Shown: one piece after another, positions 26,940 through 43,788 of the stretch
How the letters are laid out: every line of letters starts with the position of its first letter
Position numbering within the stretch: the first letter of the stretch is position 1
Virus record (IMG/VR): IMGVR_UViG_3300049215_000771
Span: 186,001-250,000 of that record
Length of the DNA stretch: 64,000 nucleotides
Strand: one strand, 5' to 3'
Made by a program: the position numbers and the translations under genes
The notes under the pieces: generated by a model
Told to the model about the DNA's origin: nothing
Databases searched by the model: none
What the model saw: only the letters and a program-made list of their open reading frames with translations

Positions 26940-27573
26940 CGATATGGAGGAGTGGGTTGAGCGAATTGAACATAAGCGCCATTATCGGACGTTGAGAAAT
27001 GCGCAACAAAAAGCCGAGAGGCTGCCCCAACGGGTGTCGCCCAATCACCCGTTAGCTGCAAACCTCTCGGCGTGCTTGAATGATACTACGATTTACCGAG
27101 GTTGTAAAGCACACGACCAGGAAATCTGAAAGAAATCCTGGTCGTGGCCGTGCGTCGAGAACCCATCCCGGTCCCCGATCCCTCCAGCCTATCCCACCAC
27201 CTGCCCCCTGTCCAGCAAAATCATCAACAATTTGACACTGTGCGTTTGTGCAGTATCAAAAATGAGGCGTCAGGTACAAAGGTTTGAAGTGGTGGTTTTA
27301 GAGATTTGTACCCTCCGGTCATTTTCTGCGCACGGATGTACACCAGGTTATTTGGGATAATGCCAGGGGGAGATTGAGGGGTGTTGCGCCGGGCTGGGGT
27401 TGGCTGGCAAAGGCTGTTTTTAGCATTTGTACAGTATTGTTTTAGGCATTTGTACCGTAGGGGTTGGCTGCGCCGGGCGTGGCTGGGGTGGGGTTGCGCC
27501 GAATTGCGTTGGGAGATTCCGAACCTTACGAGTTTGGGGCGGTCTTCCTGGCAACCCATAGGGAGGAATTTCG

Positions 27574-28665
27574 ATGTCGGTTCAACATTTCAAGGTGTTC
27601 TTCGGGCCGGACGATCCGTGGGGAGCGGTAGCGCCCACGGCGGACGAGCGCCGGGAGTTGGTGGAGAGTGGGTTTGCCGGTTTCATCGGCAACGAGCGGG
27701 CGATCAAGAAGCTGAAGGCGTCGGCGTTCGATGCCCTGGGCAAGCCCGACCATCTTTGCCGTGACCTGGCGTTCAGCATTTTCGGCCCGGCGTCGAGTGG
27801 CAAGACGACGCTGGCCCGGCTGTACGCCAAAACCGTCGATCTGCCCTTCGTGGAGGTTTCCCCGAAGGCGGTGAAGACGATGGACGACCTGTTCCGGGAG
27901 ATCGACCGGGTGTTGACGGTCGAGGGCGTGCCGGTGGTGGAAGTGGTCCGGCGCAACTACCATGTTCTGCCGCCCTGTGTGATCTTCATTGACGAGGTTC
28001 ACGCACTGGCGAAGGCAGTCGAGCAGGGCTTGCTGAAGGCGACGGAGTACAACGACGCCACGCTGGTCACGGAGTCCGGCAAAACGATCAACTGCCACAA
28101 TGTTTGCTGGATCATTGCCACGACGGACGAGGGGCGGCTGTTCGACGCATTCCGCACCCGGTTTTCGCCGGTCAACCTTCGCTATCTGAGCAAGGCGGAC
28201 ATTGCCAAGATCGTTCGCCTGGCTCACCCGGACTTCGACGAGGCGACGGCGGCGCTGGTTGCTCACTACAACAGCCGCATTCCCCGCAAGGCGTTGGAGT
28301 TCGCCCGTTACATGAAGTTGGTTCGGCAGATGGGCGCTGACCGCACCTGGGCGGACGTGGCGCAGGAAGTTGCCACGGATGAAGGGATCGACCAGTACGG
28401 CATGAGCGAGGTTCACCTTCGCATTCTGAAGGCGCTGGGCCAGGGTCCGGTGGCGGCAAACCGGATCGTGAATGTCGCAGGAGCGAAGAAGGAGGAAGTC
28501 GAGCGGTTCATCATGCCGTGGTTGCTGACGGTCACGGAAGACACGCCGGCGCTGGTCACGGTGACGAGCAGGGGATACACCATCACCGAGGCGGGCCTGG
28601 CCGAGTTGGACAAGCGAGGGATCGCCCATCGAGGGACGTTCGCCACGCCGAACTATCGCCCGTAG
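27574..28665 (+). CDS. ruvB: RuvB-like AAA+ branch-migration ATPase
   Basis: FIG.E; Walker A GPASSGKTT; Walker B FIDEVH; ATT.....DAFRTRF; C-terminal winged helix G.D..G......L....GP......RG..T. Confidence 0.8.
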   Translation: MSVQHFKVFFGPDDPWGAVAPTADERRELVESGFAGFIGNERAIKKLKASAFDALGKPDHLCRDLAFSIFGPASSGKTTLARLYAKTVDLPFVEVSPKAVKTMDDLFREIDRVLTVEGVPVVEVVRRNYHVLPPCVIFIDEVHALAKAVEQGLLKATEYNDATLVTESGKTINCHNVCWIIATTDEGRLFDAFRTRFSPVNLRYLSKADIAKIVRLAHPDFDEATAALVAHYNSRIPRKALEFARYMKLVRQMGADRTWADVAQEVATDEGIDQYGMSEVHLRILKALGQGPVAANRIVNVAGAKKEEVERFIMPWLLTVTEDTPALVTVTSRGYTITEAGLAELDKRGIAHRGTFATPNYRP

Positions 28666-28776
28666 TTCGGCGGCTGGCCGGGGGCTGCCCACTCCTGGCC
28701 TGGGCGCAATAGCCTACTGGTACAAACCTTCAAGTTGATGTTTTAGAGATTTGTACCCTACGGGCTGGAGGGAAGC

Positions 28777-28932
28777 ATGAAATACATCGTGTGGGTACGG
28801 GAGAAGGGGCGTTGGGAGCCGAACGGCGACGGGCCTTTGACGCAGAAGCAGGCCGAGCGGATTGCCAAGGAAATCCGTCAGGAGTGCAACGTGCCGACGA
28901 AGGTGTTGCCGGTGGGACAAGAACCGAAATAG
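28777..28932 (+). CDS. small hypothetical protein
   Basis: GGAGG SD after motif A. Confidence 0.6.
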   Translation: MKYIVWVREKGRWEPNGDGPLTQKQAERIAKEIRQECNVPTKVLPVGQEPK

Positions 28933-28940
28933 GAGGGGAT

Positions 28941-29141
28941 ATGGACCCTGTTGCTTGCATCGAGGAAGCCGAGGCGCAGATCGAATCCAACAACCCGGAC
29001 GATGCTGCCTGGGCGCTTCAGGACTATCGGGAGTGGCGGCGCAAGGGTGGATTCACCGACGCCGGCCTGGACGAGCGTGCCCGGATTGTCAACAAGGAAA
29101 TCAAGCAGACCGGGCATCCTGGGGTGAACCTGGGATTTTGA
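28941..29141 (+). CDS. small hypothetical protein
   Basis: AGGAGG SD. Confidence 0.65.
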   Translation: MDPVACIEEAEAQIESNNPDDAAWALQDYREWRRKGGFTDAGLDERARIVNKEIKQTGHPGVNLGF

Positions 29142-29197
29142 TGAAAGTTTCCGAACCTTGCTGGCCCGGCAAGGTCTTCCATGCGGGAGGGGACGAC

Positions 29198-29332
29198 ATG
29201 AAGAAAACGAATCGTGTGCGTAAACATCGTAGGGACAAGAACAACGGCAAGAACGGTTGGGTGGGTGGAAATCCCCGCTACGACCGTCGCAAGGCGACCG
29301 AGGGAAAGAATCGGTCGATGGGCCGCAATTAG
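29198..29332 (+). CDS. small basic protein
   Basis: after motif B. Confidence 0.55.
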   Translation: MKKTNRVRKHRRDKNNGKNGWVGGNPRYDRRKATEGKNRSMGRN

Positions 29333-29344
29333 GGAGGGGCTGCA

Positions 29345-29590
29345 ATGCCTGTTTCGTTGAATCGTGTTCTGACCGTGGCGAAGGGCAACGGGGGCTTCCT
29401 GGACCGCCTGGGCATTGAGACGATTGCCAGGGAGGACCGGCTTCGCCTGTTGCTGGTTCGGTGTGGCAATGGTCGTTTCCTGGCCCCGGCGCAGGACGTG
29501 AACCATTTCATCGCCATCATCGAGCGAGACAACCAGGACTACATTCGGGACGTGTCGCTGCCGACTTCCGACCCGATCTGGAAAACCTGA
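29345..29590 (+). CDS. hypothetical protein
   Basis: GGAGG SD; stop abuts motif B. Confidence 0.65.
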   Translation: MPVSLNRVLTVAKGNGGFLDRLGIETIAREDRLRLLLVRCGNGRFLAPAQDVNHFIAIIERDNQDYIRDVSLPTSDPIWKT

Positions 29591-29657
29591 AAGTTTCCGA
29601 ACCTTGCTGGCCCGGCAAGGTCTTCCATGCGAGTCGAGACAACCTGGATAGGGAGAA

Positions 29658-30179
29658 ATGAACATGGTCACTTTCAGCAAGGGCGACAACATCATCGACA
29701 GCCGGGACGTGATTTCCCGCATCGAGGAGTTGGAGTCCGAGCGTGAAGCCTTGTCCGATGCCGTGGACAGCGCTCGTGAGGCGTTGGAGGAACACCAAAG
29801 CAACGAGCCGGACGAGGACGCCGACGAAGAAGTACACGAAGCGTACCAGGAGAAGCTGTCGGAGTTGAAGGAAGCGCTGGTCGAGGCGGCTTCCGACCTG
29901 GACGATTGGGACGAGGACGACGACCAGGGCGGCGAGTTGAAGGAGCTTCGGGCCTTCAGCGAGGAGGGCGAGAGCGCCACGTCGGACTGGCCGCACGGCG
30001 CAATGTGCATCCTGGAAAGCTACTTCGAGGACTACTGCCAGGAGTTGCTGGCCGACATCGGCGACTTGCCGAAGGACTTGCCGCATTACATCGTGATCGA
30101 CTGGACGGCCACGGCGAAGAACCTGGAGGCCGACTATTCGAGCATCACCTGGGGCGGCGAGACGTATCTGGTCCGCTGA
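29658..30179 (+). CDS. acidic ArdA-like antirestriction (DNA mimic) protein
   Basis: very acidic; C-terminus FEDY..ELL.D.G.LP..L..YI.ID....A..L..DY resembles ArdA. Confidence 0.6.
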   Translation: MNMVTFSKGDNIIDSRDVISRIEELESEREALSDAVDSAREALEEHQSNEPDEDADEEVHEAYQEKLSELKEALVEAASDLDDWDEDDDQGGELKELRAFSEEGESATSDWPHGAMCILESYFEDYCQELLADIGDLPKDLPHYIVIDWTATAKNLEADYSSITWGGETYLVR

Positions 30180-30252
30180 TCCCGAACCTTAGACCATTCG
30201 CCCCGGTCTAAGGTATGCGTCGAGTATCCATTACCCTGGTAGGGAGAGAGTC

Positions 30253-30429
30253 ATGCAAGCAACGGTCGAGGGCAACGAGTTGGTGGTTCGCATTCCGCTT
30301 CAGAAGCCGGCTCCGAGTTCGACGGGCCGCACCCTGATCGTGGCGAACAGTGGCGGGCCGAAGGCGACCGAGGCCGAGGTCAACGGCAAGAAGATCACGG
30401 TCAACCTGAGCGCCTGGATCAAGCCCTAA
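30253..30429 (+). CDS. small beta-rich hypothetical protein
   Basis: GGGAG SD; followed by terminator. Confidence 0.65.
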   Translation: MQATVEGNELVVRIPLQKPAPSSTGRTLIVANSGGPKATEAEVNGKKITVNLSAWIKP

Positions 30430-30555
30430 CGTGTGGGCAACCGGCCTGGGGGATGCAGCCGCCCCCAGGCCGTTTCTTTGCGATAGGGAGCAGGTACAAA
30501 CCTTCAAGTTGTAGCTTTATAGGTTTGTACCCTACCGGCCAGGAGGTAACGGACC

Positions 30556-30714
30556 ATGAAAACTGTCACGATGCCGAAGAAGCCGGACATGACGATTCGC
30601 CTGGAGCCGATCAAGATGCGGCTTCCCTTCGTGGGTCGGGGGCGCAAGACCCGGCACGAGCCTCGCAGGAGTCGGCGGGGCGACAAGCAACGGATGGCGA
30701 AGGAAAGTTTCTGA
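30556..30714 (+). CDS. small basic protein
   Basis: AGGAGG SD after motif A; stop abuts motif B. Confidence 0.6.
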   Translation: MKTVTMPKKPDMTIRLEPIKMRLPFVGRGRKTRHEPRRSRRGDKQRMAKESF

Positions 30715-30789
30715 AAAGTTTCCGAACCTTGCTGGCCCGGCGAGGTCTTCCATGCGAGAGACGAGACAACCCCCAACGGGAGATATGGA

Positions 30790-32400
30790 ATGGCTGCTTT
30801 CCTGAAGATTCAGAATCCTGGCGTTGCTGATCCCCTGGCCTTCACCCTCCTGGGTGCTTCCACGAGCCGGTCCAGCGACAACAGCGCCACCATCGGCAAG
30901 TTCGGGTCGGGCAACAAGCACGGTGTCGCCGTGTGTCTCCGTGAGGAGTTGCCGCCCGTTGTGTTCGCCGGCACGCTCCGCATGACGTTCGGCACGACCG
31001 ACGTGAAGATGGACGCCGGCACGCACAGCAAGACGTTCGCTCGTGTGCAGGTGAAGTACGGCGGCAAGGACAAGGCCGGCGTCAACCGTTCGTCCACGGA
31101 AGACCTGGGCTATGTCCTGGAGTACGGGGCTTCCGACTGGCTGGGCATCGACCTGGCGCTTCGGGAGTTCGTGTCCAACGCCATCGACCGGGCGATTGTG
31201 GAAGGCGAGATCGCTTTCATCGCCAAGTTCGCTTTCGAGTACAACGAGCGCAACCCCGGCTTCCACGCCCTCCTGGACCAGAAGGACGCCGAGGCGGTTT
31301 CCATCTGCCACAAGGCGCTGGAAACCTACCGGCTGACGGCGCAGGACTTCAAGAACGTCCGGGTCGAGGTCGTGGAGGAGAACCAGGTCCGGGCGAAGGA
31401 CGGCTACACCACGGTTTTCGTGCCGCTGAATGCCGACGTTCTGGCGTTCTACCAGTCGCTTGGCAAGTGGTTCCTGCACTTCTCGGAGCCGGAACTGCTG
31501 AACAAGACGATTCTGCCGAAGAAGAATCGCAACCTGGGCAACCGGGTCGCAGCGGTGATCTACCGTCGTGGTGTTCGTGTTCGGGAGTTCGAGAGCAGCG
31601 ACGTTCCTTCGCTGTTCGATTACAACCTGCCGAACATCGAACTGGATGAGGCACGCAAGGCCGACGACTGGCGGATTCGGACGGCGGCGGGCAAGGCCGT
31701 CCGTGATGCCGACCAGGACACGCTTCGGGTGCTGTTCCAGTCGTTCCGCAGCAGCCAGCGCTATTGGGAACACGACTTCGACACCTACGGCCTGGAAGTG
31801 TCGTCGTGGGAGACGGACAAGCCGGAAGCGGCTGCCGCCCGTCAGACCAACTGGCAGAAGGCGTTCGAGCAGGTTTTCGACGCCAACGCTGTGATCGCCA
31901 CGGCGACGGGCGGCGAGTTTGCCGAGCGGAAGGGTTACAACGTCATCACGGCCCCGGAGCCGTTCGTCAAGGCGGCTGGCAAGCATGGCGTTCGCACCCC
32001 GGAGAAGGTGTTGACGCAGGACGACCGGGAAGGGCGAGAGATCATCGACGCCACGCCGGACGCTCTTGCCGCCCTGGACTTCGTGTGGGACGTGGTTCAG
32101 CGCTCTGGCATGACCAACGGCAAGGAGCGCCCGGCCTGCAAGGTGTTCCGCAAGATCATGTCGGGAGGGTCGCAGACGTTGGGGTTCTACCGTGACGCCA
32201 CGGTGTACATCAACGAGGACATCGCCGGCTATGGTTCGCTGACGGGCGGCTGGCAGGTGTTGACGCAGCAGCTTCTCGTGACGGCGCTGGAGGAAGTGGC
32301 CCATCACGTTACGGGGGCGACCGACAACAGCCGGGACTTCCAGGACTACGTTCTGAACCTGGCGATCAAGCTGGCGAAGGTCCAGGCCGGCTTGATCTGA
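30790..32400 (+). CDS. GHKL-type ATPase with permuted motif order and degenerate zincin-like tail
   Basis: LLGAS...IGKFGSG.K precedes DW...LREFVSNAID; C-terminal EEVAHH. Confidence 0.7.
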   Translation: MAAFLKIQNPGVADPLAFTLLGASTSRSSDNSATIGKFGSGNKHGVAVCLREELPPVVFAGTLRMTFGTTDVKMDAGTHSKTFARVQVKYGGKDKAGVNRSSTEDLGYVLEYGASDWLGIDLALREFVSNAIDRAIVEGEIAFIAKFAFEYNERNPGFHALLDQKDAEAVSICHKALETYRLTAQDFKNVRVEVVEENQVRAKDGYTTVFVPLNADVLAFYQSLGKWFLHFSEPELLNKTILPKKNRNLGNRVAAVIYRRGVRVREFESSDVPSLFDYNLPNIELDEARKADDWRIRTAAGKAVRDADQDTLRVLFQSFRSSQRYWEHDFDTYGLEVSSWETDKPEAAAARQTNWQKAFEQVFDANAVIATATGGEFAERKGYNVITAPEPFVKAAGKHGVRTPEKVLTQDDREGREIIDATPDALAALDFVWDVVQRSGMTNGKERPACKVFRKIMSGGSQTLGFYRDATVYINEDIAGYGSLTGGWQVLTQQLLVTALEEVAHHVTGATDNSRDFQDYVLNLAIKLAKVQAGLI

Positions 32401-32529
32401 TCTTTCTCCCTGGGTTGGCCCGGTGGGGGAGCAATCCCCTGCCGGGCTTTTTTGTCAGCACAGGCCAGGTACAATCCTACAAGTGGATGTTTTAGAGATT
32501 TGTACCCTACCAGTCGGGAGGAAAAAACC

Positions 32530-32622
32530 ATGATTGCAGTCAAGTTGTTCATTGGGTTCTACGGCATGGCCATCGTGTCGGCCATCATCGCCTGGTTGAC
32601 CAATGGTGAACGAAAACAGTAA
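32530..32622 (+). CDS. small membrane peptide (30 aa)
   Basis: GGAGG SD, single TM, between motif A and motif B. Confidence 0.55.
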   Translation: MIAVKLFIGFYGMAIVSAIIAWLTNGERKQ

Positions 32623-32824
32623 AAGTTTCCGAACCTTGCTGGCCCGGCGAGGTCTTCTATGCGAAGGACACAACGCCGAACGAAAAGGGGGTTAGATGCA
32701 GCTTCTCACTTGTTTAGCTGAGGCTTGTAAGGAACCATGAGCCTCGAACAAGGTTCCCCCTACGCCGCCTGCGACGGCGTAGGATTGGCCTGCGATTTCA
32801 ACAACCCATACGGAGGAAAGTTTC

Positions 32825-33379
32825 ATGGTGATGCACGGTTCCGATCACGCCCTTCGCAGTCAGTTCAAGGTGGGCGACAAGGTTTATTTCGGTCGCAAAC
32901 GGGGCGAGAAAACGCTCGGCGAGATCGTCCGCTTCGGCCCGAAGAACGCCAAGGTCAAGCAGTTGGAGGATCGGGGTTCGATTCGGGATTATCCCATCGG
33001 CACGACCTGGACGGTCCCGCTCAAGCTGCTGACGCTGGCCACGGTGCAGTTTCCCGCCGACAAGCTGCCCAGCAGCGCTCCGCCCCCGCCCGTGAAGCGG
33101 GAGCCGTTGAAGTACAACCCGTTCGCCGGCATCGACAACCTGCTCCTGGAAGCCCTGGCGTCGGCCTACAGCGGCCTCAGCCCGGAGAACCTGACCTGTG
33201 ACGGCGAGGCCAGCGCCGCCCATGTCCAGGCCACCCGGACGCACCTGAATCGTGTCATTCGTGGCTGCAAGCTGGCCCTGAACCGTGATGATCTCGACGA
33301 AGGCGAGGTCTTCACCTGGCTGATGACCAAGCGGGACTATGAGCGCCAGCGGGCCGAGCGAAAATCGGCCACGGCCTAA
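32825..33379 (+). CDS. hypothetical protein (SH3/KOW-like N-terminus)
   Basis: FKVGDKV.F..G......K..KV. Confidence 0.65.
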   Translation: MVMHGSDHALRSQFKVGDKVYFGRKRGEKTLGEIVRFGPKNAKVKQLEDRGSIRDYPIGTTWTVPLKLLTLATVQFPADKLPSSAPPPPVKREPLKYNPFAGIDNLLLEALASAYSGLSPENLTCDGEASAAHVQATRTHLNRVIRGCKLALNRDDLDEGEVFTWLMTKRDYERQRAERKSATA

Positions 33380-33448
33380 GAAATTTCCGAACCTCCGCTC
33401 GCCCCGGAGGTCTTCCTTGCGGGCAACGACAACCATAGGGAGAAGGAC

Positions 33449-33895
33449 ATGAAGCATATCGACGACCTGATGAAGTCGCAACAGGGCGAGCGCAACCCAG
33501 GGCAGCACATCGGCAAGTTCCTGTTGGAACATTCCAACTCGCCGGAATACCTGGTGAGCCAACTGTCGGCCTACCTGGAAGCGGCCCAGGCCGACCTGGA
33601 AGCCGAGCGAGCGATGTTTCGGCGTCTCACGAAGCGGCCCGACCCGCCGAAGCCCACCAAGTTCGCCGTCGTGCAGGTGAAGGGCGGGGCGTCCAACGCC
33701 CTGGGGACGAGCGGGCCGGTCCAGGTCTGCCAGTACAAGCAGGACGCACAAGACCTGGCGGTGAAGATCGCCCTTGAGGGGTTGACCGAGCCTGGTGATC
33801 CGGGCGAGGCCGAGGTTCGCAAGGAAATCTTGGAAACGGGAGGCTACATCGACAACAGCGGCGAGTGGGCCGTGTGCATCGAGAGCATCGAGTAA
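33449..33895 (+). CDS. hypothetical protein
   Basis: after motif B. Confidence 0.7.
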   Translation: MKHIDDLMKSQQGERNPGQHIGKFLLEHSNSPEYLVSQLSAYLEAAQADLEAERAMFRRLTKRPDPPKPTKFAVVQVKGGASNALGTSGPVQVCQYKQDAQDLAVKIALEGLTEPGDPGEAEVRKEILETGGYIDNSGEWAVCIESIE

Positions 33896-34379: not shown

Positions 34380-34444
34380 AAGTTTCCGAACCTCCGCTCG
34401 CCCCGGAGGTCTTCCTTGCGAGACAACCATAGGGAGGGCGAAAG

Positions 34445-34645: not shown

Positions 34646-34680
34646 CCATGCTATTCTTCCTGTTGGTGGGCCTGTTCACG

Positions 34681-35258: not shown

Positions 35259-35328
35259 AAGTTTCCGAACCTCGCTGGCCCGGCGAGGTCTTCCTTGCGA
35301 GCAACGACAACCATAGGGAGGACTGAAC

Positions 35329-35583: not shown

Positions 35584-35651
35584 AAGTTTCCGAACCTCCG
35601 CTCGCCCCGGAGGTCTTCCTTGCGGGTAACGACAACCATAGGGAGAACGAG

Positions 35652-35870: not shown

Positions 35871-35970
35871 GTGCTGGACTGCTAGTGGTGCTAGTCCCTA
35901 ACTCGCAAACCACCAAGGGGGTGCAAAGCCCCCGCTGCGAAACCATCAACCCCATACGGAGAATCGACTC

Positions 35971-36363: not shown

Positions 36364-36440
36364 TTTCCGAACCTCCGCTCGCCCCGGAGGTCTTCCTTGC
36401 GAGTGACGAAACCATCAACTTGATAGGGAGGGATTGAACC

Positions 36441-36647: not shown

Positions 36648-36720
36648 GAAATTTCCGAACCTCCGCTCGCCCCGGAGGTCTTCCTTGCGAGTGATGACAA
36701 CCATAGGGAGGATTGAAATC

Positions 36721-37068: not shown

Positions 37069-37135
37069 CGAGTACGGCATGGAGCCGGGCAACTTCGCCC
37101 GGCTCTTTTTTGTGAAGCATCATAGGAGAGAAACC

Positions 37136-37453: not shown

Positions 37454-37510
37454 AGTTCGGTGTGCCATGCCCAGGCACACCCTTGCGACATCCAACATAG
37501 GGGGCTTACC

Positions 37511-37705
37511 ATGACGATGAAGTACATACTCCTGAAGGTCGAGATCGAACACGAGCCGGACGCCGAACCTGATGACATTGCCGCCGAGGTCGAGGTTCAC
37601 TATGATGACACGGATGGAAGCATCACCAAGTCCGAGGTCGTTGCTGTGGGGAATTCCCCTGGCCTGCTTCGCTACATCAGCGACAAGCCGAAGCCGAAAA
37701 GTTAG
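37511..37705 (+). CDS. small acidic protein
   Basis: ORF with SD. Confidence 0.6.
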   Translation: MTMKYILLKVEIEHEPDAEPDDIAAEVEVHYDDTDGSITKSEVVAVGNSPGLLRYISDKPKPKS

Positions 37706-37878
37706 AGGATTGTACCTGCACTGTCGGCTAAAGGTTGAGTGGCCCAGCCCGGCGCAAGCTGAAGCTGGGCCTCCCATATTCTCCCAAGCAGGCCAGGTCA
37801 GCCCTGGCCTGCTTCTCCCTGCGCCCAGCCTGTACAAATCTCAAAATATCACCATTAGACCATTGTACCCTAGCGGTT

Positions 37879-38051
37879 GCCTCCGCAACGCTCTAAGCCG
37901 AGAGGCGGGTAAACCTTGAAACCTGGATGCCAGTCCTGGCGGTAGGGGTGAGCGTGATTAGGCCAATTACACCCGACTGGCTTCAATGCCTGCATCGGTC
38001 CTGGCAGACTGGTGTGCCGTGGTGGTGTGGGTTCGAGTCCCACCGGAGGCT
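37879..38051 (+). ncRNA. tRNA-like RNA (acceptor stem and T arm with ~140-nt insert)
   Basis: GCCTCCG (37879-85) pairs with CGGAGGC (38044-50); T arm GTGGG-TTCGAGT-CCCAC; 5' end 7-8 nt after TACCCT of motif A. Confidence 0.7.
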
Positions 38052-38145
38052 GCAATTTTCTTTGGGATTTTGCGAACCTTGAAGACTTGCCAGCGTCTTC
38101 TATGCGTAACGAGTCGAAACCATCAACCTGTAGGGAGAATCGAAC

Positions 38146-38403
38146 ATGGCGAAGTGTATCGTGACCGTGAACCCGAAGCGTGGTCGTCCGGCGATCTTCG
38201 TTGGCGTCCTGAAGACCAACATCGTCCGTCTGCTCCGGGCGCACGGCCTGGTGAAGACCCAGCGCATCCTGGCATCCGAGGGCGTCAGCGCCAAGGTCGG
38301 GGCGAAGAAGTCCCCGGTCAAGATCAGCCTGCCGACCCTGAGCAAGCTGGCGACCGAGGCCGGCATCGAGTTCAAGCGTGGTCGCCCGGCACTGGCGGCG
38401 TGA
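38146..38403 (+). CDS. basic DNA-binding protein with two AT-hooks
   Basis: KRGRP near both termini. Confidence 0.65.
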   Translation: MAKCIVTVNPKRGRPAIFVGVLKTNIVRLLRAHGLVKTQRILASEGVSAKVGAKKSPVKISLPTLSKLATEAGIEFKRGRPALAA

Positions 38404-38490
38404 GCCACTAAGGGCGAGGGGTAGCGGTGTGGAACGCAATGACCCCCTCGCCCCCAAACTTGCGAGCTATATCTTCATAGGGAGAATGCC

Positions 38491-38796
38491 GTGGCTGCCG
38501 CTTTGGACAAAGAAATCAGCTTCCACCTTGACCGGGCCGCAACGCTGGCCCGTGCTGAGGTCGAGCGCCTGGCCCGCAAGCTGCTCCGGGAACACCCCAA
38601 CCTTGAAGCCTTCATCATGGCGATGGGGTTGGCGACGTTCAGCGTCAAAGGCCAGGCCGACAGCCTGGCCCTGTACGAACGGAAGTATTTCAAGCCCCTG
38701 GAAGACTTCATTGTGAAGTGGGACAGCGCCCTGGGGCTGACGGGTGATCCCATGTGGATTGAAGGGCCGGACGGCGAGATCAAAACGGAGTGGTAG
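38491..38796 (+). CDS. hypothetical protein
   Basis: ORF with SD. Confidence 0.65.
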   Translation: MAAALDKEISFHLDRAATLARAEVERLARKLLREHPNLEAFIMAMGLATFSVKGQADSLALYERKYFKPLEDFIVKWDSALGLTGDPMWIEGPDGEIKTEW

Positions 38797-38848
38797 TTAG
38801 AGGTTTGTACCCTACAACCTGGGCAACGAACCATAGGGAGACAAGACC

Positions 38849-39091
38849 ATGAAGTTTCTGCCGACCATCACCCTGACCGATGCCGTGTATGCGGCTCTCC
38901 GCAACGGCCAGCTTCGCCTCCAGTGTGGGCAGTGGATTCGTATTCCTGGCGACCCGCCTGGCGTGACCAGCAAGCCCAGCCGCTTCGTCAAGGCGAGCCG
39001 GGTTCACCTGGACATCGTACACCCTGACGGGCCGTTCGCCACGGGCCGGGTGAGCAACGAGCGTTTCAAGACCAGGGCGAAAAATCGTTGA
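38849..39091 (+). CDS. hypothetical protein
   Basis: after motif A half; stop abuts motif B. Confidence 0.7.
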   Translation: MKFLPTITLTDAVYAALRNGQLRLQCGQWIRIPGDPPGVTSKPSRFVKASRVHLDIVHPDGPFATGRVSNERFKTRAKNR

Positions 39092-39160
39092 AAGTTTCCG
39101 AACCTCCGCTCGCCCCGGAGGTCTTCCTTGCGAGCAACGACAACCATAGGGAGACAAGTC

Positions 39161-39640
39161 ATGCTGCATGATTGTTCGCACGATGGGTGCAAGGTCGGCG
39201 GCTGCATCAAGCTGGAAGTCCTGGTCGCCCCCGACTACGAGAAAGACCCGCAACGCTTCAAGTGGTTCTGTGAAGCCCACGCCGAGGCGTTCGAGGCCGA
39301 CCTGGAGAAGCGCCACGACTACGCCAAACGGGTCGAGGTCATCCCGGTCGTGGGCATGGGAGCGACGGCGGGCTATGGCAGCGACCGTTACCCGTACACG
39401 GTCATCAAGGTCAGCACCAACGGCAAGACCATCACCGTGCAGGCCGACGACTACAAGCCGGCCCCTGGCCATCACTACATCAACAACCAGGTGTATACCT
39501 ATACTCCGAACCCGCAGGGCGAGACGAAGGTTTTCACCCTCCGGGACAACGGGCGCTGGGTGTTGAGGGGCGAGAGCAAGCAGGGCGGGCTGTGCCTGGG
39601 CCTGGGCGTTCGCCGCCACTACCATGACCCGTCGTTCTGA
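39161..39640 (+). CDS. conserved phage hypothetical protein
   Basis: VGMGAT..YGSDRYPYTVI ... G.R..Y.DPSF. Confidence 0.75.
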   Translation: MLHDCSHDGCKVGGCIKLEVLVAPDYEKDPQRFKWFCEAHAEAFEADLEKRHDYAKRVEVIPVVGMGATAGYGSDRYPYTVIKVSTNGKTITVQADDYKPAPGHHYINNQVYTYTPNPQGETKVFTLRDNGRWVLRGESKQGGLCLGLGVRRHYHDPSF

Positions 39641-39774
39641 CGTACACTAAGACTTGGGGGTGGGTGGATAGTTTGCAAAAGCCCTGGGCGCAAGTCCAGG
39701 GCGAACCCCCACTGCGTTAAGCCTTTGTACCCTCCAGGATGGGACGAAGGGCATCACAAAGGGAGGATGAGGAA

Positions 39775-40041
39775 ATGACGCTGAGACGGAAACTCTTCAA
39801 CGGCATTACGCTGTGGCTGGGGATGTACGCCATCACGGTGTTCATCTACTGGTTGAAGGTGGGCCACTTCTACGACGGCCTGCTGTTCGCCCTGATGACG
39901 GCGAGCGCCAAAACGGTCTGGAGCCTGGTCCACAAGGCCATCACCCACCGGGAGCCGAGCAAGGTCATCATCACCGAAGAAGCGCTGCCCACGTCGGCCC
40001 AGCTTGAGGCCGAGGTCTGTGATTGCAAAGAAGCTGCTTGA
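39775..40041 (+). CDS. small membrane protein (DUF2061-like topology)
   Basis: two TM segments. Confidence 0.5.
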   Translation: MTLRRKLFNGITLWLGMYAITVFIYWLKVGHFYDGLLFALMTASAKTVWSLVHKAITHREPSKVIITEEALPTSAQLEAEVCDCKEAA

Positions 40042-40045
40042 ACGA

Positions 40046-40130
40046 CGGCACGGCCAGGCCAAGAGGTAGGCCATTCCGACAACTGGTTGCCTACGCTAGT
40101 TGTCGAAATGCTCTTGGCCCGGCACGGCCA
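40046..40130. mobile_element. miniature inverted-repeat element flanked by 11-bp direct repeats
   Basis: CGGCACGGCCA direct repeats abut a 63-bp unit with 9-bp terminal inverted repeats GGCCAAGAG/CTCTTGGCC. Confidence 0.45.
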
Positions 40131-40265
40131 AAACTGGTCCTGCAAACAGGGTAAGTGGGGCGGCAGCGGGCCGTTCCCCACCAGTTTTTTGCGACTATAG
40201 CCCGGTACAAAGGTCAAGAGCTATATCTTTGACCTTTGTACCCTATGGGGCAAAGGAGGGCTGCG

Positions 40266-40562
40266 ATGGAAACTTTCGATAAGGCCGAATGGCGGCGACA
40301 AGGGGGCATGACCCCGCACGGTCGCTACGTTCCGACAACCAGCACAGGGCGCAAGGTTGTGGCGAAAGCACACCGGCCACCCCTGAAGGGTGAGGTTTAC
40401 CTGAAGCCTTCGGGTCGGCGTGGCATCTACCTGGTGTTGACTGCTCAGAACGACTTCGCCCGGCGTTCGTACACCATCGTTCGTGTGGTCAAGGGCGAGA
40501 GCGAGGCAAGGGCGCATTGGGAACAGGCCCGGCGTGACTACCTCCGAATTACTGGAAGATAA
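40266..40562 (+). CDS. hypothetical basic protein
   Basis: after motif A; stop abuts motif B. Confidence 0.65.
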   Translation: METFDKAEWRRQGGMTPHGRYVPTTSTGRKVVAKAHRPPLKGEVYLKPSGRRGIYLVLTAQNDFARRSYTIVRVVKGESEARAHWEQARRDYLRITGR

Positions 40563-40613
40563 TTCCGAACCTTGCACGCCCAGCGAGGTCTTCCTTGCGA
40601 GGAGGGCAGAACG

Positions 40614-40844
40614 ATGAAACAAATGGACCATGCGGCTTATCAACGCAAGTGCCGTGGTCTGCCAGAAGCGTCCCTTCGCTACATCTTGAAGGATGCGAAG
40701 GAAGCTATCGACGCCCAACCGTTCGGCGAGAACGCTGGTTACTACGCCGATGAAATCCACTACGCTGCAATGGAGTTGCGACGGCGAGGCCAGGAGGCCA
40801 GCGACCTTCCCCCACTTGTGAAGGACATAGGGATCAAATCATGA
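40614..40844 (+). CDS. conserved phage hypothetical protein
   Basis: L.YI..DA.EA ... G.Y.DE.HY...EL.RR. Confidence 0.7.
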   Translation: MKQMDHAAYQRKCRGLPEASLRYILKDAKEAIDAQPFGENAGYYADEIHYAAMELRRRGQEASDLPPLVKDIGIKS

Positions 40845-41344
40845 ACGTGGAACTTGTGAAGCGTCTGTTCGCCCACTTCGCCCCCGCCCCCGAAGTCAAG
40901 ATCGACAAGTACAGCGAGGATGGCTGTTGCCCTGCCATCATCATCGGCCCCTTCACCATCAGTCAGTCGCTTACCGTCGTCAAGGGGCTGAAGGGCGACC
41001 ACGAGGTTCCCAACTACAGCCTGGACGTTCACGTTGGCGACGGCGACATTATCGACCTGGCGACTGCCACGAACTTCGCCGACGTGGTTGTGGCTGCCGT
41101 CGAGAACTACGCCGGCTGGCTGGCACGGGCTGAACTGGACCGCATCGCTGACGACGCCTATGCCGCTGACCTGGAGAGCGAGCGTCTGGCCTTGCAAGCC
41201 GCCTTCAACGAGGGGCTGGAATACTACAGGACGACTGCCCCCGGCGAGCGTAGCAAGGACGCCAACCCCTACCCCCACGGCATCGAGCATTACTACAAGT
41301 GGGCGTCCGGCTACAGCCAGGGCGAGGCGGAAGCGGTGTTTTGA
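40841..41344 (+). CDS. hypothetical protein
   Basis: ATGA overlap. Confidence 0.7.
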   Translation: MNVELVKRLFAHFAPAPEVKIDKYSEDGCCPAIIIGPFTISQSLTVVKGLKGDHEVPNYSLDVHVGDGDIIDLATATNFADVVVAAVENYAGWLARAELDRIADDAYAADLESERLALQAAFNEGLEYYRTTAPGERSKDANPYPHGIEHYYKWASGYSQGEAEAVF

Positions 41345-41460
41345 CCTTTGTACCCTGTCGGTTGTCGAGGCCGGGCCGGACGAAAAAAGTTTCCGAACCT
41401 TCAACGTCCGGCCCGGTCTTCCTGGTGGGCAACGAACTCTTCAACGAAAGGCAGGTTGCG

Positions 41461-42117
41461 ATGAACACTTTCCGAGCCGGCAGCGACCAGTCCCAGCGTT
41501 TCATCAACGAGGGGCGGCGTCGTGAGAAGCAGATTGCGGACGCCTTGAAGAAACAGCACGGCCTGAACCTGGTCGAGCCGACTGACGCCGAAGACCGTTA
41601 CCAGAAGATCGACCGCTGGCTGGTCGAGGGCGACAAGCGGACGGCGGTTCAGATCAAGTACAGGGAGAGCGGCGACGACTTGCTGGTGGAAGTGTTCGAC
41701 CGTTGGCACGGTTGGGACCATCCCCGCAACAAAACGGGCCGGGACGTGGTTGGCGATAGCAAGCTGTACGCTGTGCTTCGCCTGGACCGGGAAACCGTCG
41801 TTCTCACCAGCGCCGCCATCCTCAAGGGGATTGTGCAGGAGATGGTGACGGCAGCGCAGGCGACGGGCTGGACCGTGGACCGTGGCACGCACAGCAAAGT
41901 CCTCCGCTACTTCAAGGCGGGTGGGTGCTGTGAGTTGAAGGTCCAGTCCGACCCCAACGACGGCAGGCCGAAGATGGTTGCATACATCCCGGCCAACGTC
42001 CTGATCTTCGAGCAGCAGGCCGAGGTCTACAAGGTCCGCCTGCCTGCCGACTGGTCAGGAGAGGGCAAGAAGAAGGAACGGCCACGCCGCACCGACCTTC
42101 GGGGCGGCACGAACTAG
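41461..42117 (+). CDS. PD-(D/E)XK nuclease-like protein
   Basis: G..RE ... D....ID ... VQIKYR. Confidence 0.6.
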   Translation: MNTFRAGSDQSQRFINEGRRREKQIADALKKQHGLNLVEPTDAEDRYQKIDRWLVEGDKRTAVQIKYRESGDDLLVEVFDRWHGWDHPRNKTGRDVVGDSKLYAVLRLDRETVVLTSAAILKGIVQEMVTAAQATGWTVDRGTHSKVLRYFKAGGCCELKVQSDPNDGRPKMVAYIPANVLIFEQQAEVYKVRLPADWSGEGKKKERPRRTDLRGGTN

Positions 42118-42239
42118 GCTAGTAGCAGGGACAACCAGGAGCAGCGACGGCTGACTCCTGGCCCCTGCGAACGCTGCGTTAGACCATTGTACCCTAGTTC
42201 GATGTGAGCTATATCTTCAACCTGGATATGGAGAAAGTC

Positions 42240-42887
42240 ATGGGTCGCAAACTGGTGGTGCGAATCGAACACGATTCCGACGTTGAAGTGCCGGACAGCG
42301 GGTATGACGGCTGGAAGCTGGTGTCCTTCGGACGCCGGCACAGCAACTACGAAGACCCCGACAACTACATCAAGGGCGTGAACGAGTTCCGGGAAATCAC
42401 CCCGGCCAACATCGGCCTTCGCCGCAAGCTGAACGTCGGCCTGGCCTTCTGGCTGTCCTACTACGAACACAGCCTTGGTTGCTGGTCCCTCAAGGGCGAA
42501 GGTCCGCAATGCCAGTGGGACACGGCGCAACTGGCCGGCATCCTGCTGTGGACCGGCAAGCCCGGCGACATTGGAGCGAAGACCCTGGAGGATCGGGCGA
42601 AAGATGCTCGCTGCTTCCTGGAGAGCTACAACGATTGGGCTAACGGCAACTGCTACTGGTACAGCGTCGAGAAAACGGACGGCACGGACGTTGAGAGCGT
42701 CGGCGGGTTCATCGGCGAAGAAGCTGTGAACGAGGCGCTGGCCGAAGTCCTTGAGGCCGGCGACGTTGTGACCGTCGAAGGTGACGCCGCCTGGACCTTC
42801 GACGCACCGGAAGGCGTCGAAGTGGTGGACGAACACGAGGAGGACGAGGAGGAGGAAGCGACGGTCAGCGACGGTGCAGGCATCTGA
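42240..42887 (+). CDS. acidic hypothetical protein
   Basis: GGAG SD; acidic tail. Confidence 0.7.
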   Translation: MGRKLVVRIEHDSDVEVPDSGYDGWKLVSFGRRHSNYEDPDNYIKGVNEFREITPANIGLRRKLNVGLAFWLSYYEHSLGCWSLKGEGPQCQWDTAQLAGILLWTGKPGDIGAKTLEDRAKDARCFLESYNDWANGNCYWYSVEKTDGTDVESVGGFIGEEAVNEALAEVLEAGDVVTVEGDAAWTFDAPEGVEVVDEHEEDEEEEATVSDGAGI

Positions 42888-43209
42888 CACGACAAGCCCC
42901 AGGCTGGCCCGGCCTGGGGCATTTTGGGAAATCCCCATCAGGTACAAACTTTCAAGTTGATGTTTTAGGCCATTGTACCCTAGCGGTTGGCCCGATGGCT
43001 GCCGGTGGCACGGTGGCATCGGACAACCTTCTGACGGCTCTAGGGGTAAGGGGCCGTATGGGGTTGCTGTGCTTGTGCGTTCGTCGCCACAACGACGCAT
43101 CGGCCTGCAATCTTTGCAACCATCCGTCAGAATTCTTGAAAGTTTCCGAACCTTGTTGGTTCGGCGCAGTCTTCCTTGCGGGTAGGACAGTCATACGGAG
43201 AATCGAGTC

Positions 43210-43575
43210 ATGTTGAAGCATCGTGTTGCGGTTATCATCCCCTCCACCGTCAAGGGCAACGAGCCGGCTCCTGCCGACCTGGTTGCCAAGTGGGTCAAGG
43301 CGGCGAAGATCAAGCTGGGAACCCTGTTCGGTGGCTTCACTGCCACGAAGGGCGAAGGCGGCTGGGTTTCCCCCGTCCACGGCTTGATTGAAGAGCCGGT
43401 CACTGTTGTCGCCGCCCACTGTGACGAAGAGGCTTTCAACCGTCACGCCCAGGACGTTCGTGAATTCGCCTTGACCGTCGCCGTGGCGCTGGAGCAGGAA
43501 GCCGTTTCCGTCCAGTTCGACAACACGCTGGAATTCGTCAGCGTGCCGCCCGCCGTCGCCGTCAACGTGGTCTGA
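43210..43575 (+). CDS. DUF3574/SAM-lyase-like protein
   Basis: FGG.T...G.GGW ... IEE...V ... EQEAV. Confidence 0.5.
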   Translation: MLKHRVAVIIPSTVKGNEPAPADLVAKWVKAAKIKLGTLFGGFTATKGEGGWVSPVHGLIEEPVTVVAAHCDEEAFNRHAQDVREFALTVAVALEQEAVSVQFDNTLEFVSVPPAVAVNVV

Positions 43576-43788
43576 TCGGAAGGCCAGGGTCGCCCACCCT
43601 GGCCTTTGTTGGTAATACCCTACAGGTACAAAGGCTGAAGCGTTGCTTTAGAGGTTTGTACCCTAGTGGTCGGGTGAAAACCCTCGCAACAACAATCCTG
43701 GGCGGCGAGCGCCGGCCCTTGTAAGTTTCCGAACCTTGTGGTCTTGTGAAGCGTCTTCCCTGCGAAGCATACGGAAAGGACAATAACC

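What the first reader, a model, noticed from the sequence alone, without database searches (positions are those of the whole stretch)
27519..43760. Motif B: ECF-sigma-like promoter whose spacer is a co-varying 7-bp hairpin
There are 19 copies including 21841. GAACCT and GTCT are fixed 15 bp apart (16 in three copies) even where the spacer sequence is unrelated, which is the hallmark of a bipartite promoter and close to ECF consensus (GAAC-like -35, GTC-like -10). Twelve copies also form a 7-bp stem with a 7-nt loop and compensatory changes: ACCTCCG/CGGAGGT x6, ACCTTGC/GCAAGGT x2, ACCTTGC/GCGAGGT x3, ACCTCGC/GCGAGGT x1; one more has a 10-bp variant. Possible readings: a phage regulon hijacking one host ECF sigma (Planctomycetes encode many), a cruciform or hairpin promoter as in N4, or a terminator-promoter composite.
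Basis: partly seen in the sequence, partly recalled or inferred. Interest (0 to 1): 0.8.

Follow-up and report, generated by a model that had tools for sequence, protein, structure and literature searches.

The report
ECF-like promoter cassettes in a megaphage
A giant T4-like phage, probably of Planctomycete bacteria, places the same short two-box promoter-like signal in front of dozens of its small genes, and in about half of the copies the gap between the boxes is a small hairpin; this is a compact variant of the promoter/stem-loop cassettes known from T4-type phages, not a new kind of system.

Summary
GAACCT-N15/16-GTCT occurs 19 times on the + strand (21844-43756) and once on the - strand (57513-57538), against 0.28 expected. 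Twelve copies have the stated 7-bp stems and one has a shifted 10-bp stem.

The motif is the core of a 65-90-bp cassette: upstream stop codon, AAAGTTTCC, GAACCT, spacer, (G)GTCTTCC, TGCGAG, short leader, ATAGGGAG (Shine-Dalgarno), ATG.

The boxes and spacing match the E. coli sigma-E (ECF) consensus. They persist with unrelated spacers at 14 more sites in the same 673-kb T4-like megaphage, and at 3 sites in a diverged relative binned with a Gemmataceae MAG.

A promoter for an ECF-type sigma is therefore well supported. No sigma gene was found in about 180 kb examined, so host versus phage origin stays open.

The hairpin is optional: 18 of 34 copies lack it. It occurs only where the upstream ORF ends within 11 nt. 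Two-sided covariation is thin (2 pairs). It is most likely a PeSL-like attenuator or 3'-end stem-loop packed into the spacer.

Verdict: new variant of a known kind, moderate interest.

The parts
21844..21869 (+). Motif B copy, N16, no hairpin. Precedes the PAPS-reductase-like gene 21907-22926 (GC3 0.84).
27521..27545 (+). Motif B copy, N15, no hairpin; motif A lies 214 nt upstream. Precedes the RuvB/clamp-loader-like AAA+ gene 27574-28665.
29153..29177 (+). Motif B copy with hairpin ACCTTGC/GCAAGGT. Upstream stop codon is 11 nt away.
29599..29623 (+). Motif B copy with hairpin ACCTTGC/GCAAGGT. Precedes gene 29658-30179.
30184..30209 (+). Motif B copy, N16. Shifted 10-bp hairpin ACCTTAGACC/GGTCTAAGGT that includes the GTCT box. 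Lacks the TCC after GTCT.
30724..30748 (+). Motif B copy with hairpin ACCTTGC/GCGAGGT (T.G pair). Precedes the conserved 536-aa gene 30790-32400.
32631..32655 (+). Motif B copy with hairpin ACCTTGC/GCGAGGT (T.G pair).
33389..33413 (+). Motif B copy with hairpin ACCTCCG/CGGAGGT. Precedes gene 33449-33895.
34388..34412 (+). Motif B copy with hairpin ACCTCCG/CGGAGGT. Precedes gene 34445-34645.
35267..35291 (+). Motif B copy with hairpin ACCTCGC/GCGAGGT. Precedes gene 35329-35583.
35592..35616 (+). Motif B copy with hairpin ACCTCCG/CGGAGGT.
36369..36393 (+). Motif B copy with hairpin ACCTCCG/CGGAGGT. Precedes gene 36441-36647.
36657..36681 (+). Motif B copy with hairpin ACCTCCG/CGGAGGT. Precedes gene 36721-37068 (GTG start).
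38074..38098 (+). Motif B copy, no hairpin. Follows a tRNA-like RNA candidate and precedes gene 38146-38403.
39100..39124 (+). Motif B copy with hairpin ACCTCCG/CGGAGGT. Precedes gene 39161-39640.
40567..40591 (+). Motif B copy with hairpin ACCTTGC/GCGAGGT and a different loop (ACGCCCA).
41395..41419 (+). Motif B copy, no hairpin; motif A lies 46 nt upstream. Precedes gene 41461-42117.
43148..43172 (+). Motif B copy, no hairpin. Precedes gene 43210-43575.
43731..43756 (+). Motif B copy, N16, no hairpin; motif A lies 74 nt upstream. Precedes gene 43789-44532.
57513..57538 (-). Probable 20th copy on the minus strand: TTTCC GAACCT N16 GTCT, then AAGGAGG and ATG of gene 57126-57488(-).
33376..33451 (+). 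One whole cassette as an example: stop codon TAA, GAAATTTCC, -35-like GAACCT, hairpin spacer, -10-like GGTCTTCC, TTGCGGG (predicted start region), leader, SD ATAGGGAG (33435-33442), ATG 33449.

Best explanation
Motif B is the core of a repeated regulatory cassette that gives individual genes of a 673-kb T4-like megaphage their own promoter.

Recognition (inferred). RNA polymerase carrying an alternative, ECF/group-4-type sigma binds a -35 box cCGAACCt and, 16 nt downstream, a -10 box (G)GTCTTCc. By analogy with sigma-E, transcription should start at the G or A of the conserved TGCGAG, 8-9 nt after GTCT. That gives a 12-41-nt leader with a strong SD (ATAGGGAG).

Class. Motif B is one of two interleaved promoter classes (A and B) in a gene-dense region of small genes and DNA/RNA-metabolism genes. 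It marks a regulon spread over at least 66-390 kb and about 552 kb of the genome. Whether the sigma is host (probably Gemmataceae) or phage encoded is not known.

Hairpin (inferred, less certain). It is an optional add-on. Where the upstream ORF ends flush with the cassette, the spacer is a GC-rich palindrome. On sense-strand read-through RNA it would fold into a 7-10-bp stem-loop that ends inside the -10 box. It most likely attenuates, terminates or 3'-stabilises the upstream transcript roughly where the next transcript begins. That is the role proposed for the stem-loop of T4-type PeSL cassettes, here nested inside the promoter spacer.

The near-identical cassettes probably also serve as recombination substrates for gene shuffling.
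For: Shown.
- 20 copies against 0.28 expected.
- All copies are co-oriented with the genes. GTCT lies 20-49 nt before a start codon with an SD.
- The boxes are invariant while 25 distinct spacers are unrelated.
- 14 more copies occur elsewhere in the same genome, before SNF2 helicase, CCA/poly(A)-polymerase-like, DUF6011 and other genes.
- 3 intergenic copies with the same flanks (ttCC GAACCTTG..GTCT TCC) occur in a relative with 52-66% aa identity in shared genes, on a Gemmataceae MAG contig.
- The geometry equals sigma-E: GGAACTT-N16-TCAAA with YGGTCAAAA, against CGAACCT-N16-TCTTC with GGTC (PMC1312014).
- Sigma-70-like sites are at chance level in the island (4 found, 3.8 expected), while good ones exist in the low-GC region.
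- TAGGGAG is a shared SD that also follows other motifs.
- Hairpins: 8 distinct spacers (15 copies) fall within the best 0.2-6% of their own spacer shuffles, and the other 17 spacers look like their shuffles.
- Hairpins occur only where the upstream stop is within 11 nt (15/15 against 5/17; Fisher p=3e-5; p=0.0016 on distinct spacers).
- Wobble pairs are T.G on the + strand and never A.C, which fits sense-strand RNA.
- Cassette identity has sharp edges at the stop codon and at the SD.
- Small-gene order is shuffled relative to L122.
- The genome has T4 hallmarks: Gp23, gp32, UvsX-like, endonuclease VII.
- PeSL anatomy and proposed function are described.
Against: - No transcript data, so no TSS or 3' end is shown.
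- No Sigma70_r2/r4 domain in 127 window ORFs, in precomputed Pfam for about 115 kb more of the genome, or in 37 kb of the MAG contig.
- The hairpins lack a T-tract and are not called terminators. The island has three canonical terminators with T6 tracts, so the phage does use ordinary terminators.
- In 61-nt context the hairpin regions do not fold better than dinucleotide shuffles.
- Two-sided covariation is only 2 pairs and 5 cells.
- The link between hairpin and upstream stop distance is confounded by shared ancestry of the duplicated cassettes.
Confidence: 0.6

Rival explanations
1. Same promoter, but the hairpin has no function. The palindromic spacers are inherited from a few ancestral cassettes that spread by duplication or gene conversion. 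The apparent compensatory changes arise from template-switch (quasi-palindrome) mutation, not from selection for pairing.
For: The six ACCTCCG copies are near-identical 45-70-bp cassettes. Only 2 pairs show two-sided change. 18 of 34 copies work without a hairpin, if they work at all. The relative L162 has no hairpin copy.
Against: At least four unrelated stem/loop solutions exist: CCG/CGG, TGC/GCA-GCG, ACCGGG/CCCGGT in L001, and the shifted 10-bp stem at 30184. The loops also differ: CTCGCCC, TGGCCCG, ACGCCCA, CCGCCCA, and a 3-nt CAG loop closing the 9-bp L027 stem. Fold energies are bimodal. Hairpins associate with flush upstream ORFs. Motif A cassettes also often embed their core in an inverted repeat.
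Confidence: 0.2
2. The palindromic spacer is an operator. A dimeric phage or host regulator binds the inverted repeat between the boxes and represses or times a subset of motif-B promoters.
For: Inverted repeats overlapping promoters are the usual form of operators. Only a subset of promoters carries them, as expected for a sub-regulon. Regulators that bind ECF or sigma-70 spacer DNA are known (MerR/CueR, discussed in PMC5758882).
Against: The half-sites differ between copies while staying complementary, which suits base-pairing better than recognition by one protein. The T.G wobble breaks the DNA-level symmetry. The arm centres are about 14 bp apart, which is not a helical repeat. No candidate regulator was identified.
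Confidence: 0.1
3. N4-like hairpin or cruciform promoter. A phage-encoded polymerase recognises the extruded hairpin, and the boxes are part of that structure.
For: A 7-10-bp GC-rich stem lies just upstream of the expected start. The genome is huge and could encode unusual polymerases. Motif A looks like a single-block phage-polymerase promoter.
Against: Half of the copies, including all three in the relative, have identical boxes and spacing but no hairpin. Loops are 3-9 nt and differ in sequence between copies. From my own knowledge, not checked here, N4 early promoters have a conserved 3-nt loop. T.G pairs would be A.C mismatches on the other strand. No RNAP family was detected in the window.
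Confidence: 0.04
4. Not a promoter. The cassette is an RNA-level signal (processing or translation-control site) within polycistronic mRNA, or a DNA recombination site of a cassette array (attC-like).
For: Repeats lie between small ORFs, as in integron arrays. The cassette edges are sharp and gene order is shuffled. The leader and SD are conserved.
Against: Two short boxes at fixed spacing across unrelated spacers are typical of sigma domain 4 and domain 2 contacts, not of RNA motifs or attC sites. The boxes match an ECF consensus. No integron integrase lies next to the array. Copies are dispersed over more than 450 kb in front of large genes too.
Confidence: 0.06

Closest known systems
PeSLs (promoter-early stem-loops) of T4-type phages (Arbiol et al. 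2010, PMC2839356; Comeau et al. 2014, PMC4122927)
   Same: Short conserved cassettes (stem-loop + promoter + SD) repeated before small, mostly unknown ORFs in plastic regions of T4-like genomes. The stem-loop is proposed as a terminator or attenuator of upstream transcription. The cassettes are linked to modular gene shuffling. Here the genome has T4 hallmarks, the cassettes have sharp edges, and gene order is shuffled relative to a relative.
   Different: PeSL promoters are sigma-70 consensus early promoters with an AT-rich UP region, and the stem-loop lies upstream of them. Here the boxes are ECF/sigma-E-like and the stem-loop is nested inside the -35/-10 spacer, overlapping both boxes by 3 bp. 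The hairpin is present in only about half of the copies. Mini-circle formation was not tested.
ECF (group 4) sigma promoters, especially RpoE/sigma-E type (Rhodius et al. 2006, PMC1312014)
   Same: The AAC-containing -35 (GGAACTT against CGAACCT), the preferred 16-nt spacing to TC.., the GGTC at the -10 (YGGTCAAAA against nGGTCTTCC), A/T-rich DNA upstream of the -35, and high conservation of both boxes.
   Different: The second half of the -10 is TTCC, not AAA. No cognate sigma or anti-sigma was identified. The regulon is viral replication and nucleic-acid-metabolism genes, not envelope stress genes. GC-rich palindromic spacers are not a described ECF feature; the described spacer effect is a T-tract (PMC5758882).
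Phage-encoded two-domain sigma factors, e.g. phiEco32 gp36 (PMC12276001)
   Same: A phage redirects host core RNAP to its middle and late genes with a minimal sigma2/sigma4-like factor and a phage-specific promoter motif repeated through the genome.
   Different: gp36 promoters have the consensus AATGTA centred at -11.5, not GAAC/GTC boxes. No gp36-like or Sigma70 gene was detected in the sequence examined here.
N4 virion-RNAP hairpin promoters (from my own knowledge, not checked here)
   Same: A short GC-rich hairpin immediately upstream of the start site in a phage promoter.
   Different: In N4 the hairpin is obligatory and is itself the recognition element. Here it is dispensable for the conserved boxes.

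Membership tests
ECF/group-4 sigma-dependent promoter | -35 element with an AAC core (GGAAC-like) | tested here: met
   GAACC is invariant in all 27 aligned N15 copies. The extended consensus is TTTCCGAACCTtg.
ECF/group-4 sigma-dependent promoter | -10 element of (C/G)GTC type at 16 +/- 1 nt from the -35 | tested here: met
   GTCT is invariant and G precedes it in 16 of 19 copies. The distance from GAACCT to TC is 16 nt (17 in the N16 copies), the same as the sigma-E optimum.
ECF/group-4 sigma-dependent promoter | A cognate ECF sigma (sigma2 + sigma4 only) available in the infected cell, often autoregulated from the same motif | tested here: inconclusive
   No Sigma70_r2/r4 hit in 127 window ORFs, in about 115 kb more of the genome, or in 37 kb of the MAG contig. 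About three quarters of the genome and the host genome were not examined. The strict motif scan of 185,579 genomes gave only chance-level single hits, apart from the related element.
ECF/group-4 sigma-dependent promoter | Transcription start 5-7 nt downstream of the -10 | not testable with these tools
   No transcriptome data. The conserved TGCGAG lies at the predicted position.
PeSL-type promoter/stem-loop cassette | Conserved composite of stem-loop + promoter + SD repeated in intergenic spaces before small ORFs of a T4-like genome | tested here: met
   Cassette map; T4 hallmark genes.
PeSL-type promoter/stem-loop cassette | Sigma-70 consensus early promoter with an AT-rich UP region; stem-loop upstream of the promoter | tested here: not met
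   The boxes are not sigma-70-like. The stem-loop is inside the spacer.
PeSL-type promoter/stem-loop cassette | Recombination between cassettes (indels, mini-circles) | tested here: inconclusive
   Gene order of 8 shared small genes differs from L122 (1,3,6,2,5,4,7,8). Orthologs carry motif A in one phage and motif B in another. No direct evidence of cassette-mediated exchange.
Intrinsic (rho-independent) terminator | GC-rich stem-loop followed by a T/U tract | tested here: not met
   None of the motif-B hairpins is called. The tail is CTTCCTTG, with 4 T in 8. Three canonical terminators with T6 exist nearby at 32417, 37081 and 45743.
N4-type hairpin promoter | The hairpin is required and conserved in every promoter copy | tested here: not met
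   18 of 34 genome copies and 3 of 3 copies in the relative have no hairpin.
T7-like single-subunit RNAP promoter (the CCATAGGGAGA block) | A contiguous ~20-bp block ending at +1, independent of the SD | tested here: not met
   TAGGGAG always lies 5-10 nt before the start codon. It also follows unrelated upstream motifs, and conservation upstream of it is limited to duplicated cassettes. It is an extended SD.

The most novel reading that the evidence does not exclude
The palindrome nested between the -35 and -10 may be a functional coupling device, not just a squeezed-in attenuator. The same 25 bp would end the upstream transcript and start the next one. Hairpin formation, as RNA on read-through transcripts or as a cruciform under supercoiling, would then set how much each small gene is insulated from, or coupled to, its neighbour. 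As cruciforms, the palindromes could also be cut by the phage's endonuclease VII and seed cassette shuffling. In addition, the cognate factor may be a phage sigma too divergent for Pfam, which would define a new viral ECF-like sigma/promoter pair in Planctomycete megaphages.
Probability: 0.15. Interest if true: 0.75.

Novelty: new variant of a known kind. Interest (0 to 1): 0.5.

Why it matters
It gives a concrete, testable promoter model (boxes, spacing, predicted start, regulon of at least 34 sites) for an uncultured 673-kb T4-like megaphage. Transcription in such phages, and promoters in their likely Planctomycete hosts, are almost unstudied.

It shows that the 'one regulatory cassette per small gene' layout of T4 hyperplastic regions extends to very distant, very large relatives. 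It also shows that the promoter type in these cassettes can be swapped: motif A in relatives, and A plus B here.

A stem-loop nested inside a promoter spacer would be an unusually compact terminator/promoter overlap. If it works, it could be a useful part for synthetic insulated gene cassettes.

Tried and rejected
1. T7-like promoter reading of ACGACAACCATAGGGAGA. Rejected: TAGGGAG is an SD shared with other upstream motifs and always lies 5-10 nt from the start codon.

2. Sigma or RNAP gene in the window. Pfam and PHROGs on 127 ORFs of at least 95 aa found none.

3. Sigma hunt by walking the 673-kb scaffold and the 97-kb MAG contig using precomputed Pfam. None found in about 180 kb plus 37 kb.

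4. The 227-aa conserved unknown (42204-42887) as a cryptic sigma. No PDB sequence hit. In the relative it sits directly upstream of the clamp-loader-like AAA+ gene and has the size of T4 gp45, so it is more likely a sliding clamp. This is inference; no structure was predicted.

5. Host-ECF test by scanning 185,579 genomes for the strict motif. 29 single hits, mostly inside coding sequence. The only informative hit was the related mobile element in a Gemmataceae MAG.

6. Metagenome scan for more relatives. 10 single chance-like hits with no homology to the window.

7. Relatives found through the 536-aa protein (L122-L131) lack motif B, so cross-phage covariation could not be tested.

8. Megablast of the island against GenBank phages: no match.

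9. Sigma-54 and operator readings were considered from the sequence only.

10. Rfam and ARAGORN on the window: nothing at gathering thresholds.

Full report
OBSERVATION.

The pattern GAACCT-N15/16-GTCT occurs 20 times in the 64-kb window. Nineteen copies are on the + strand between 21844 and 43756, and one is on the - strand at 57513-57538. Dinucleotide-preserving shuffles gave 0.28 on average and never more than 2.

Sixteen + strand copies have a 15-nt gap and three have 16 nt (21844, 30184, 43731).

- ACCTCCG/CGGAGGT x6
- ACCTTGC/GCAAGGT x2
- ACCTTGC/GCGAGGT x3, with a T.G pair
- ACCTCGC/GCGAGGT x1

Their MFE is -9.4 to -14.1 kcal/mol. The copy at 30184 has a shifted 10-bp stem, ACCTTAGACC/GGTCTAAGGT, that includes the GTCT box.

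WHAT THE MOTIF IS PART OF.

The two boxes are the core of a longer cassette. In order it contains:
- the stop codon of the upstream gene
- AAAGTTTCC
- GAACCT(TG)
- the spacer
- (G)GTCTTCC
- tTGCGag
- a 10-35-nt leader
- (A)TAGGGAG
- 5-10 nt, then the start codon

TAGGGAG also follows other, unrelated upstream motifs and always lies 5-10 nt from a start codon. It is therefore an extended Shine-Dalgarno sequence. Its resemblance to the T7 promoter core is coincidental.

Among the six ACCTCCG copies, identity is perfect from about -9 to +37..+60. It stops abruptly at the upstream stop codon and at the SD. These are duplicated 45-70-bp cassettes.

GENOMIC CONTEXT.

The window is positions ~186,001-250,000 of IMG/VR contig IMGVR_UViG_3300049215_000771 (532,729 bp). 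The same sequence lies on a 673,178-bp ENA scaffold, which also contains the 134-kb IMG/VR contig _000772.

That genome encodes T4-type hallmark proteins: Gp23 capsid protein, gp32, a RecA/UvsX-like protein and endonuclease VII. It also encodes many translation-related genes. It is therefore a distant T4-like megaphage.

Composition splits the window:
- + strand genes at 27.5-47.6 kb, and the isolated gene 21907-22926, have GC3 of about 0.8-0.9.
- The remainder has GC3 of about 0.6.
- Every gene behind a motif-B copy, inside or outside the window, is of the high-GC3 kind.

Within the island almost every gene is preceded by motif B or by a second cassette, motif A ((GGTACAAAcc..)TTAGAggTTTGTACCCTA, 17 copies). 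In three places A sits 46-214 nt upstream of B.

Identifiable genes behind motif B are nucleic-acid enzymes:
- a clamp-loader/RuvB-like AAA+ protein
- a PAPS-reductase-like protein
- a SNF2 helicase
- a CCA-adding/poly(A)-polymerase-like enzyme
- DUF6011 proteins

IS IT A PROMOTER?

Five lines of evidence say yes.

1. All copies point the same way as the genes, and each ends 20-49 nt before a start codon.

2. The boxes are invariant and the spacing is fixed, while the 25 distinct spacers are otherwise unrelated.

3. Fourteen further copies with unrelated spacers and the same flanks occur elsewhere in the genome, at contig positions ~66-390 kb and at ~552 kb of the scaffold. Within IMG/VR, no other virus has more than a single chance match.

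4. A 97-kb contig binned with a Gemmataceae (Planctomycetota) MAG carries a related element.
 - It shares five genes with the window. Four have 52-66% aa identity; the fifth, the RuvB-like AAA+ gene, has 24%.
 - It has three intergenic motif-B sites with the same extended boxes, before a D12 methyltransferase, an ArdC-like gene and a third gene.
 - It also has three motif-A sites.
 Conservation of the boxes at this divergence argues for function. It also gives the only host clue.

5. The geometry matches a known promoter class. The E. coli sigma-E consensus is GGAACTT-N16-TCAAA, with the -10 logo (T/C)GGTCAAAA and a 5-6-nt discriminator (PMC1312014). Motif B reads cCGAACCT-N16-TCTTC, preceded by GG.

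By the same rule, the start should be the G or A of the conserved GCGAG, 8-9 nt after GTCT.

Other promoter classes behave differently:
- Sigma-70-like sites are at chance level in the island (4 found, 3.8 expected).
- Several good sigma-70-like sites exist in the low-GC3 region.
- Planctomycete housekeeping promoters are treated in the literature as sigma-70-like (PMC11958385).

Motif B is therefore a separate promoter class. A bipartite, ECF-type promoter is the best reading.

WHICH SIGMA?

This is unknown. No Sigma70-family domain was found in:
- 127 window ORFs of at least 95 aa, with Pfam or PHROGs
- precomputed Pfam annotations of about 115 kb more of the scaffold
- 37 kb of the MAG contig

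A strict-motif scan of one genome per species (185,579 genomes) gave 29 single hits, nearly all inside coding sequence. This neither supports nor excludes a host ECF whose own promoter differs in the flanks.

Phage-encoded minimal sigmas are a known solution, for example phiEco32 gp36 (PMC12276001).

THE HAIRPIN.

Fold energies of the 25-26-nt elements are bimodal.
- Eight distinct spacers (15 copies: 12 in the window, plus L027, L112 and L001) fall within the best 0.2-6% of their own spacer shuffles.
- The other 17 spacers look like their shuffles.

Several unrelated stem and loop solutions exist, and wobble pairs are always T.G on the + strand.

The evidence has clear limits:
- The first three pairs come from the boxes themselves.
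- Only two pairs (5 cells) show changes on both sides. The covariation score exceeds shuffles only modestly (22/500 reach it).
- In 61-nt context the regions do not fold better than shuffles.
- The tails lack a T-tract, whereas three canonical terminators with T6 occur in the same island.

The most informative regularity concerns the upstream gene. Hairpins occur only where the upstream ORF's stop codon lies within 11 nt of GAACC: 15/15, against 5/17 of the non-hairpin copies (p=3e-5; p=0.0016 on distinct spacers). Shared ancestry of the cassettes inflates this result.

INTERPRETATION OF THE HAIRPIN.

The hairpin is not needed for promoter recognition, because identical boxes occur without it. 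This excludes an N4-type hairpin promoter.

Its position is 10-11 nt after a stop codon and ends inside the -10. Together with the sense-strand wobble pairs, this fits a stem-loop formed on read-through RNA from the upstream gene. It would attenuate or end that transcript, or protect its 3' end, about where the next transcript starts.

This is the role proposed for the stem-loops of PeSL cassettes in T4-type phages (PMC2839356, PMC4122927). In PeSLs, however, the stem-loop lies upstream of a sigma-70 promoter.

Two observations fit the PeSL idea of modular shuffling:
- The order of eight shared small genes differs between this phage and relative L122.
- Orthologous genes carry motif B here but motif A in relatives.

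Alternatives remain open:
- a functionless palindrome maintained by duplication and template-switch mutation
- an operator for a dimeric regulator

VERDICT.

The promoter reading with an ECF-like architecture is well supported but lacks transcript data and a sigma. The 'co-varying hairpin' is real but optional and thinly supported as covariation. Its function is inferred.

This is a new variant of two known things: ECF-type promoters and T4-type promoter/stem-loop cassettes. Interest is moderate.

Noticed in passing
window + strand; TTGTACCCT starts at 27306, 28751, 30525, 32500, 34048, 37863, 38805, 39725, 40236, 41348, 42187, 42973, 43656, 44560, 45361, 45820, 47227: A second cassette, 'motif A' (TTAGAggTTTGTACCCTA), has 17 copies interleaved with motif B. 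In 11 of them an upstream arm GGTACAAAcc forms an inverted repeat with the core. A homologous contiguous ~25-bp block (TAGGTCCAGTGTACCCTAGTGGGTGT) precedes nearly every small gene in relatives L122 (340-kb contig) and L123, and 3 copies occur in the MAG element L162. It looks like a single-block promoter of a different class.
   Followed up: partly
window 27500-47600 and 21907-22926: Compositional island. Genes here have GC3 of about 0.8-0.9 against about 0.6 in the rest of the window. All genes behind motif B elsewhere in the genome are also high-GC3. This could reflect codon adaptation of a highly expressed class or a different origin; it was not resolved.
   Followed up: partly
window 37872-38056 (and perhaps 42983-43140): A ~185-nt structured RNA candidate lies directly after a motif-A copy. 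Its 5' GCCUCCG pairs with its 3' CGGAGGC next to a T-arm, GGGUUCGAGUCCCAC, forming a tRNA-like domain. There is a weak Rfam mascRNA hit (E=0.1). ARAGORN calls no tRNA or tmRNA. The phage encodes SmpB elsewhere (L180 12993-13424), so a tmRNA-like RNA is possible.
   Followed up: partly
window 24663-24726; also 34970, 38464, 40218, 42206: A tandem array of four 16-bp units, GGAGCTATATCTTCAA, lies in an intergenic gap. Single copies of GAGCTATATCTT lie just upstream of SDs in the island, and one lies inside a motif-A loop. This may be a regulator-binding or iteron-like site.
   Followed up: no
window 62120-63673(-), 59364-60536(-), 47876-48682(-), 1-212(+); loci L177, L180, L181: Large translation and metabolism repertoire: a class II (Asp/Lys/Asn-type) aaRS, a Tyr/Trp-type aaRS, a dihydroorotate-dehydrogenase-like gene, a ribosomal L7/L12-like gene at the window start, and elsewhere SmpB, an RF-1-like protein, PTH2, a HisRS fragment, PARP and ADP-ribosylglycohydrolase.
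   Followed up: no
ENA ERZ12294693 scaffold_68_c1 (673,178 bp); L179: The source genome is larger than the IMG/VR contig and joins the contigs _000771 and _000772. It carries T4-type Gp23, gp32, UvsX-like and endonuclease VII genes, so it is a T4-like megaphage.
   Followed up: partly
L162/L175/L176 (Gemmataceae MAG GCA_036557565.1, contig DATBHJ010000091.1, 60-97 kb): A related element carries a tyrosine recombinase, Dam-like and N4/N6 methyltransferases, ArdC, a clamp-loader-like AAA+ gene, a PAPS reductase and the 494-aa homolog. Both motif A and motif B are present. It could be a prophage or a mis-binned phage contig, and it is the only host clue.
   Followed up: partly
window 32417-32448, 37081-37106, 45743-45766 (+): Three canonical intrinsic terminators (9-14-bp GC-rich stems followed by T6) lie inside the island, so ordinary terminators are in use alongside the cassette hairpins.
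   Followed up: no
window 11345-11373, 2951-2978, 7833-7861, 17562-17590 (+): Good sigma-70-like promoter matches (10-11 of 12, some with TG) lie in the low-GC3 region of small ORFs. They may be the early promoter class.
   Followed up: no
window 27574-44532 compared with L122 6959-21549: Eight shared genes occur in a different order in the 340-kb relative (1,3,6,2,5,4,7,8), which suggests cassette-wise shuffling of small genes.
   Followed up: partly
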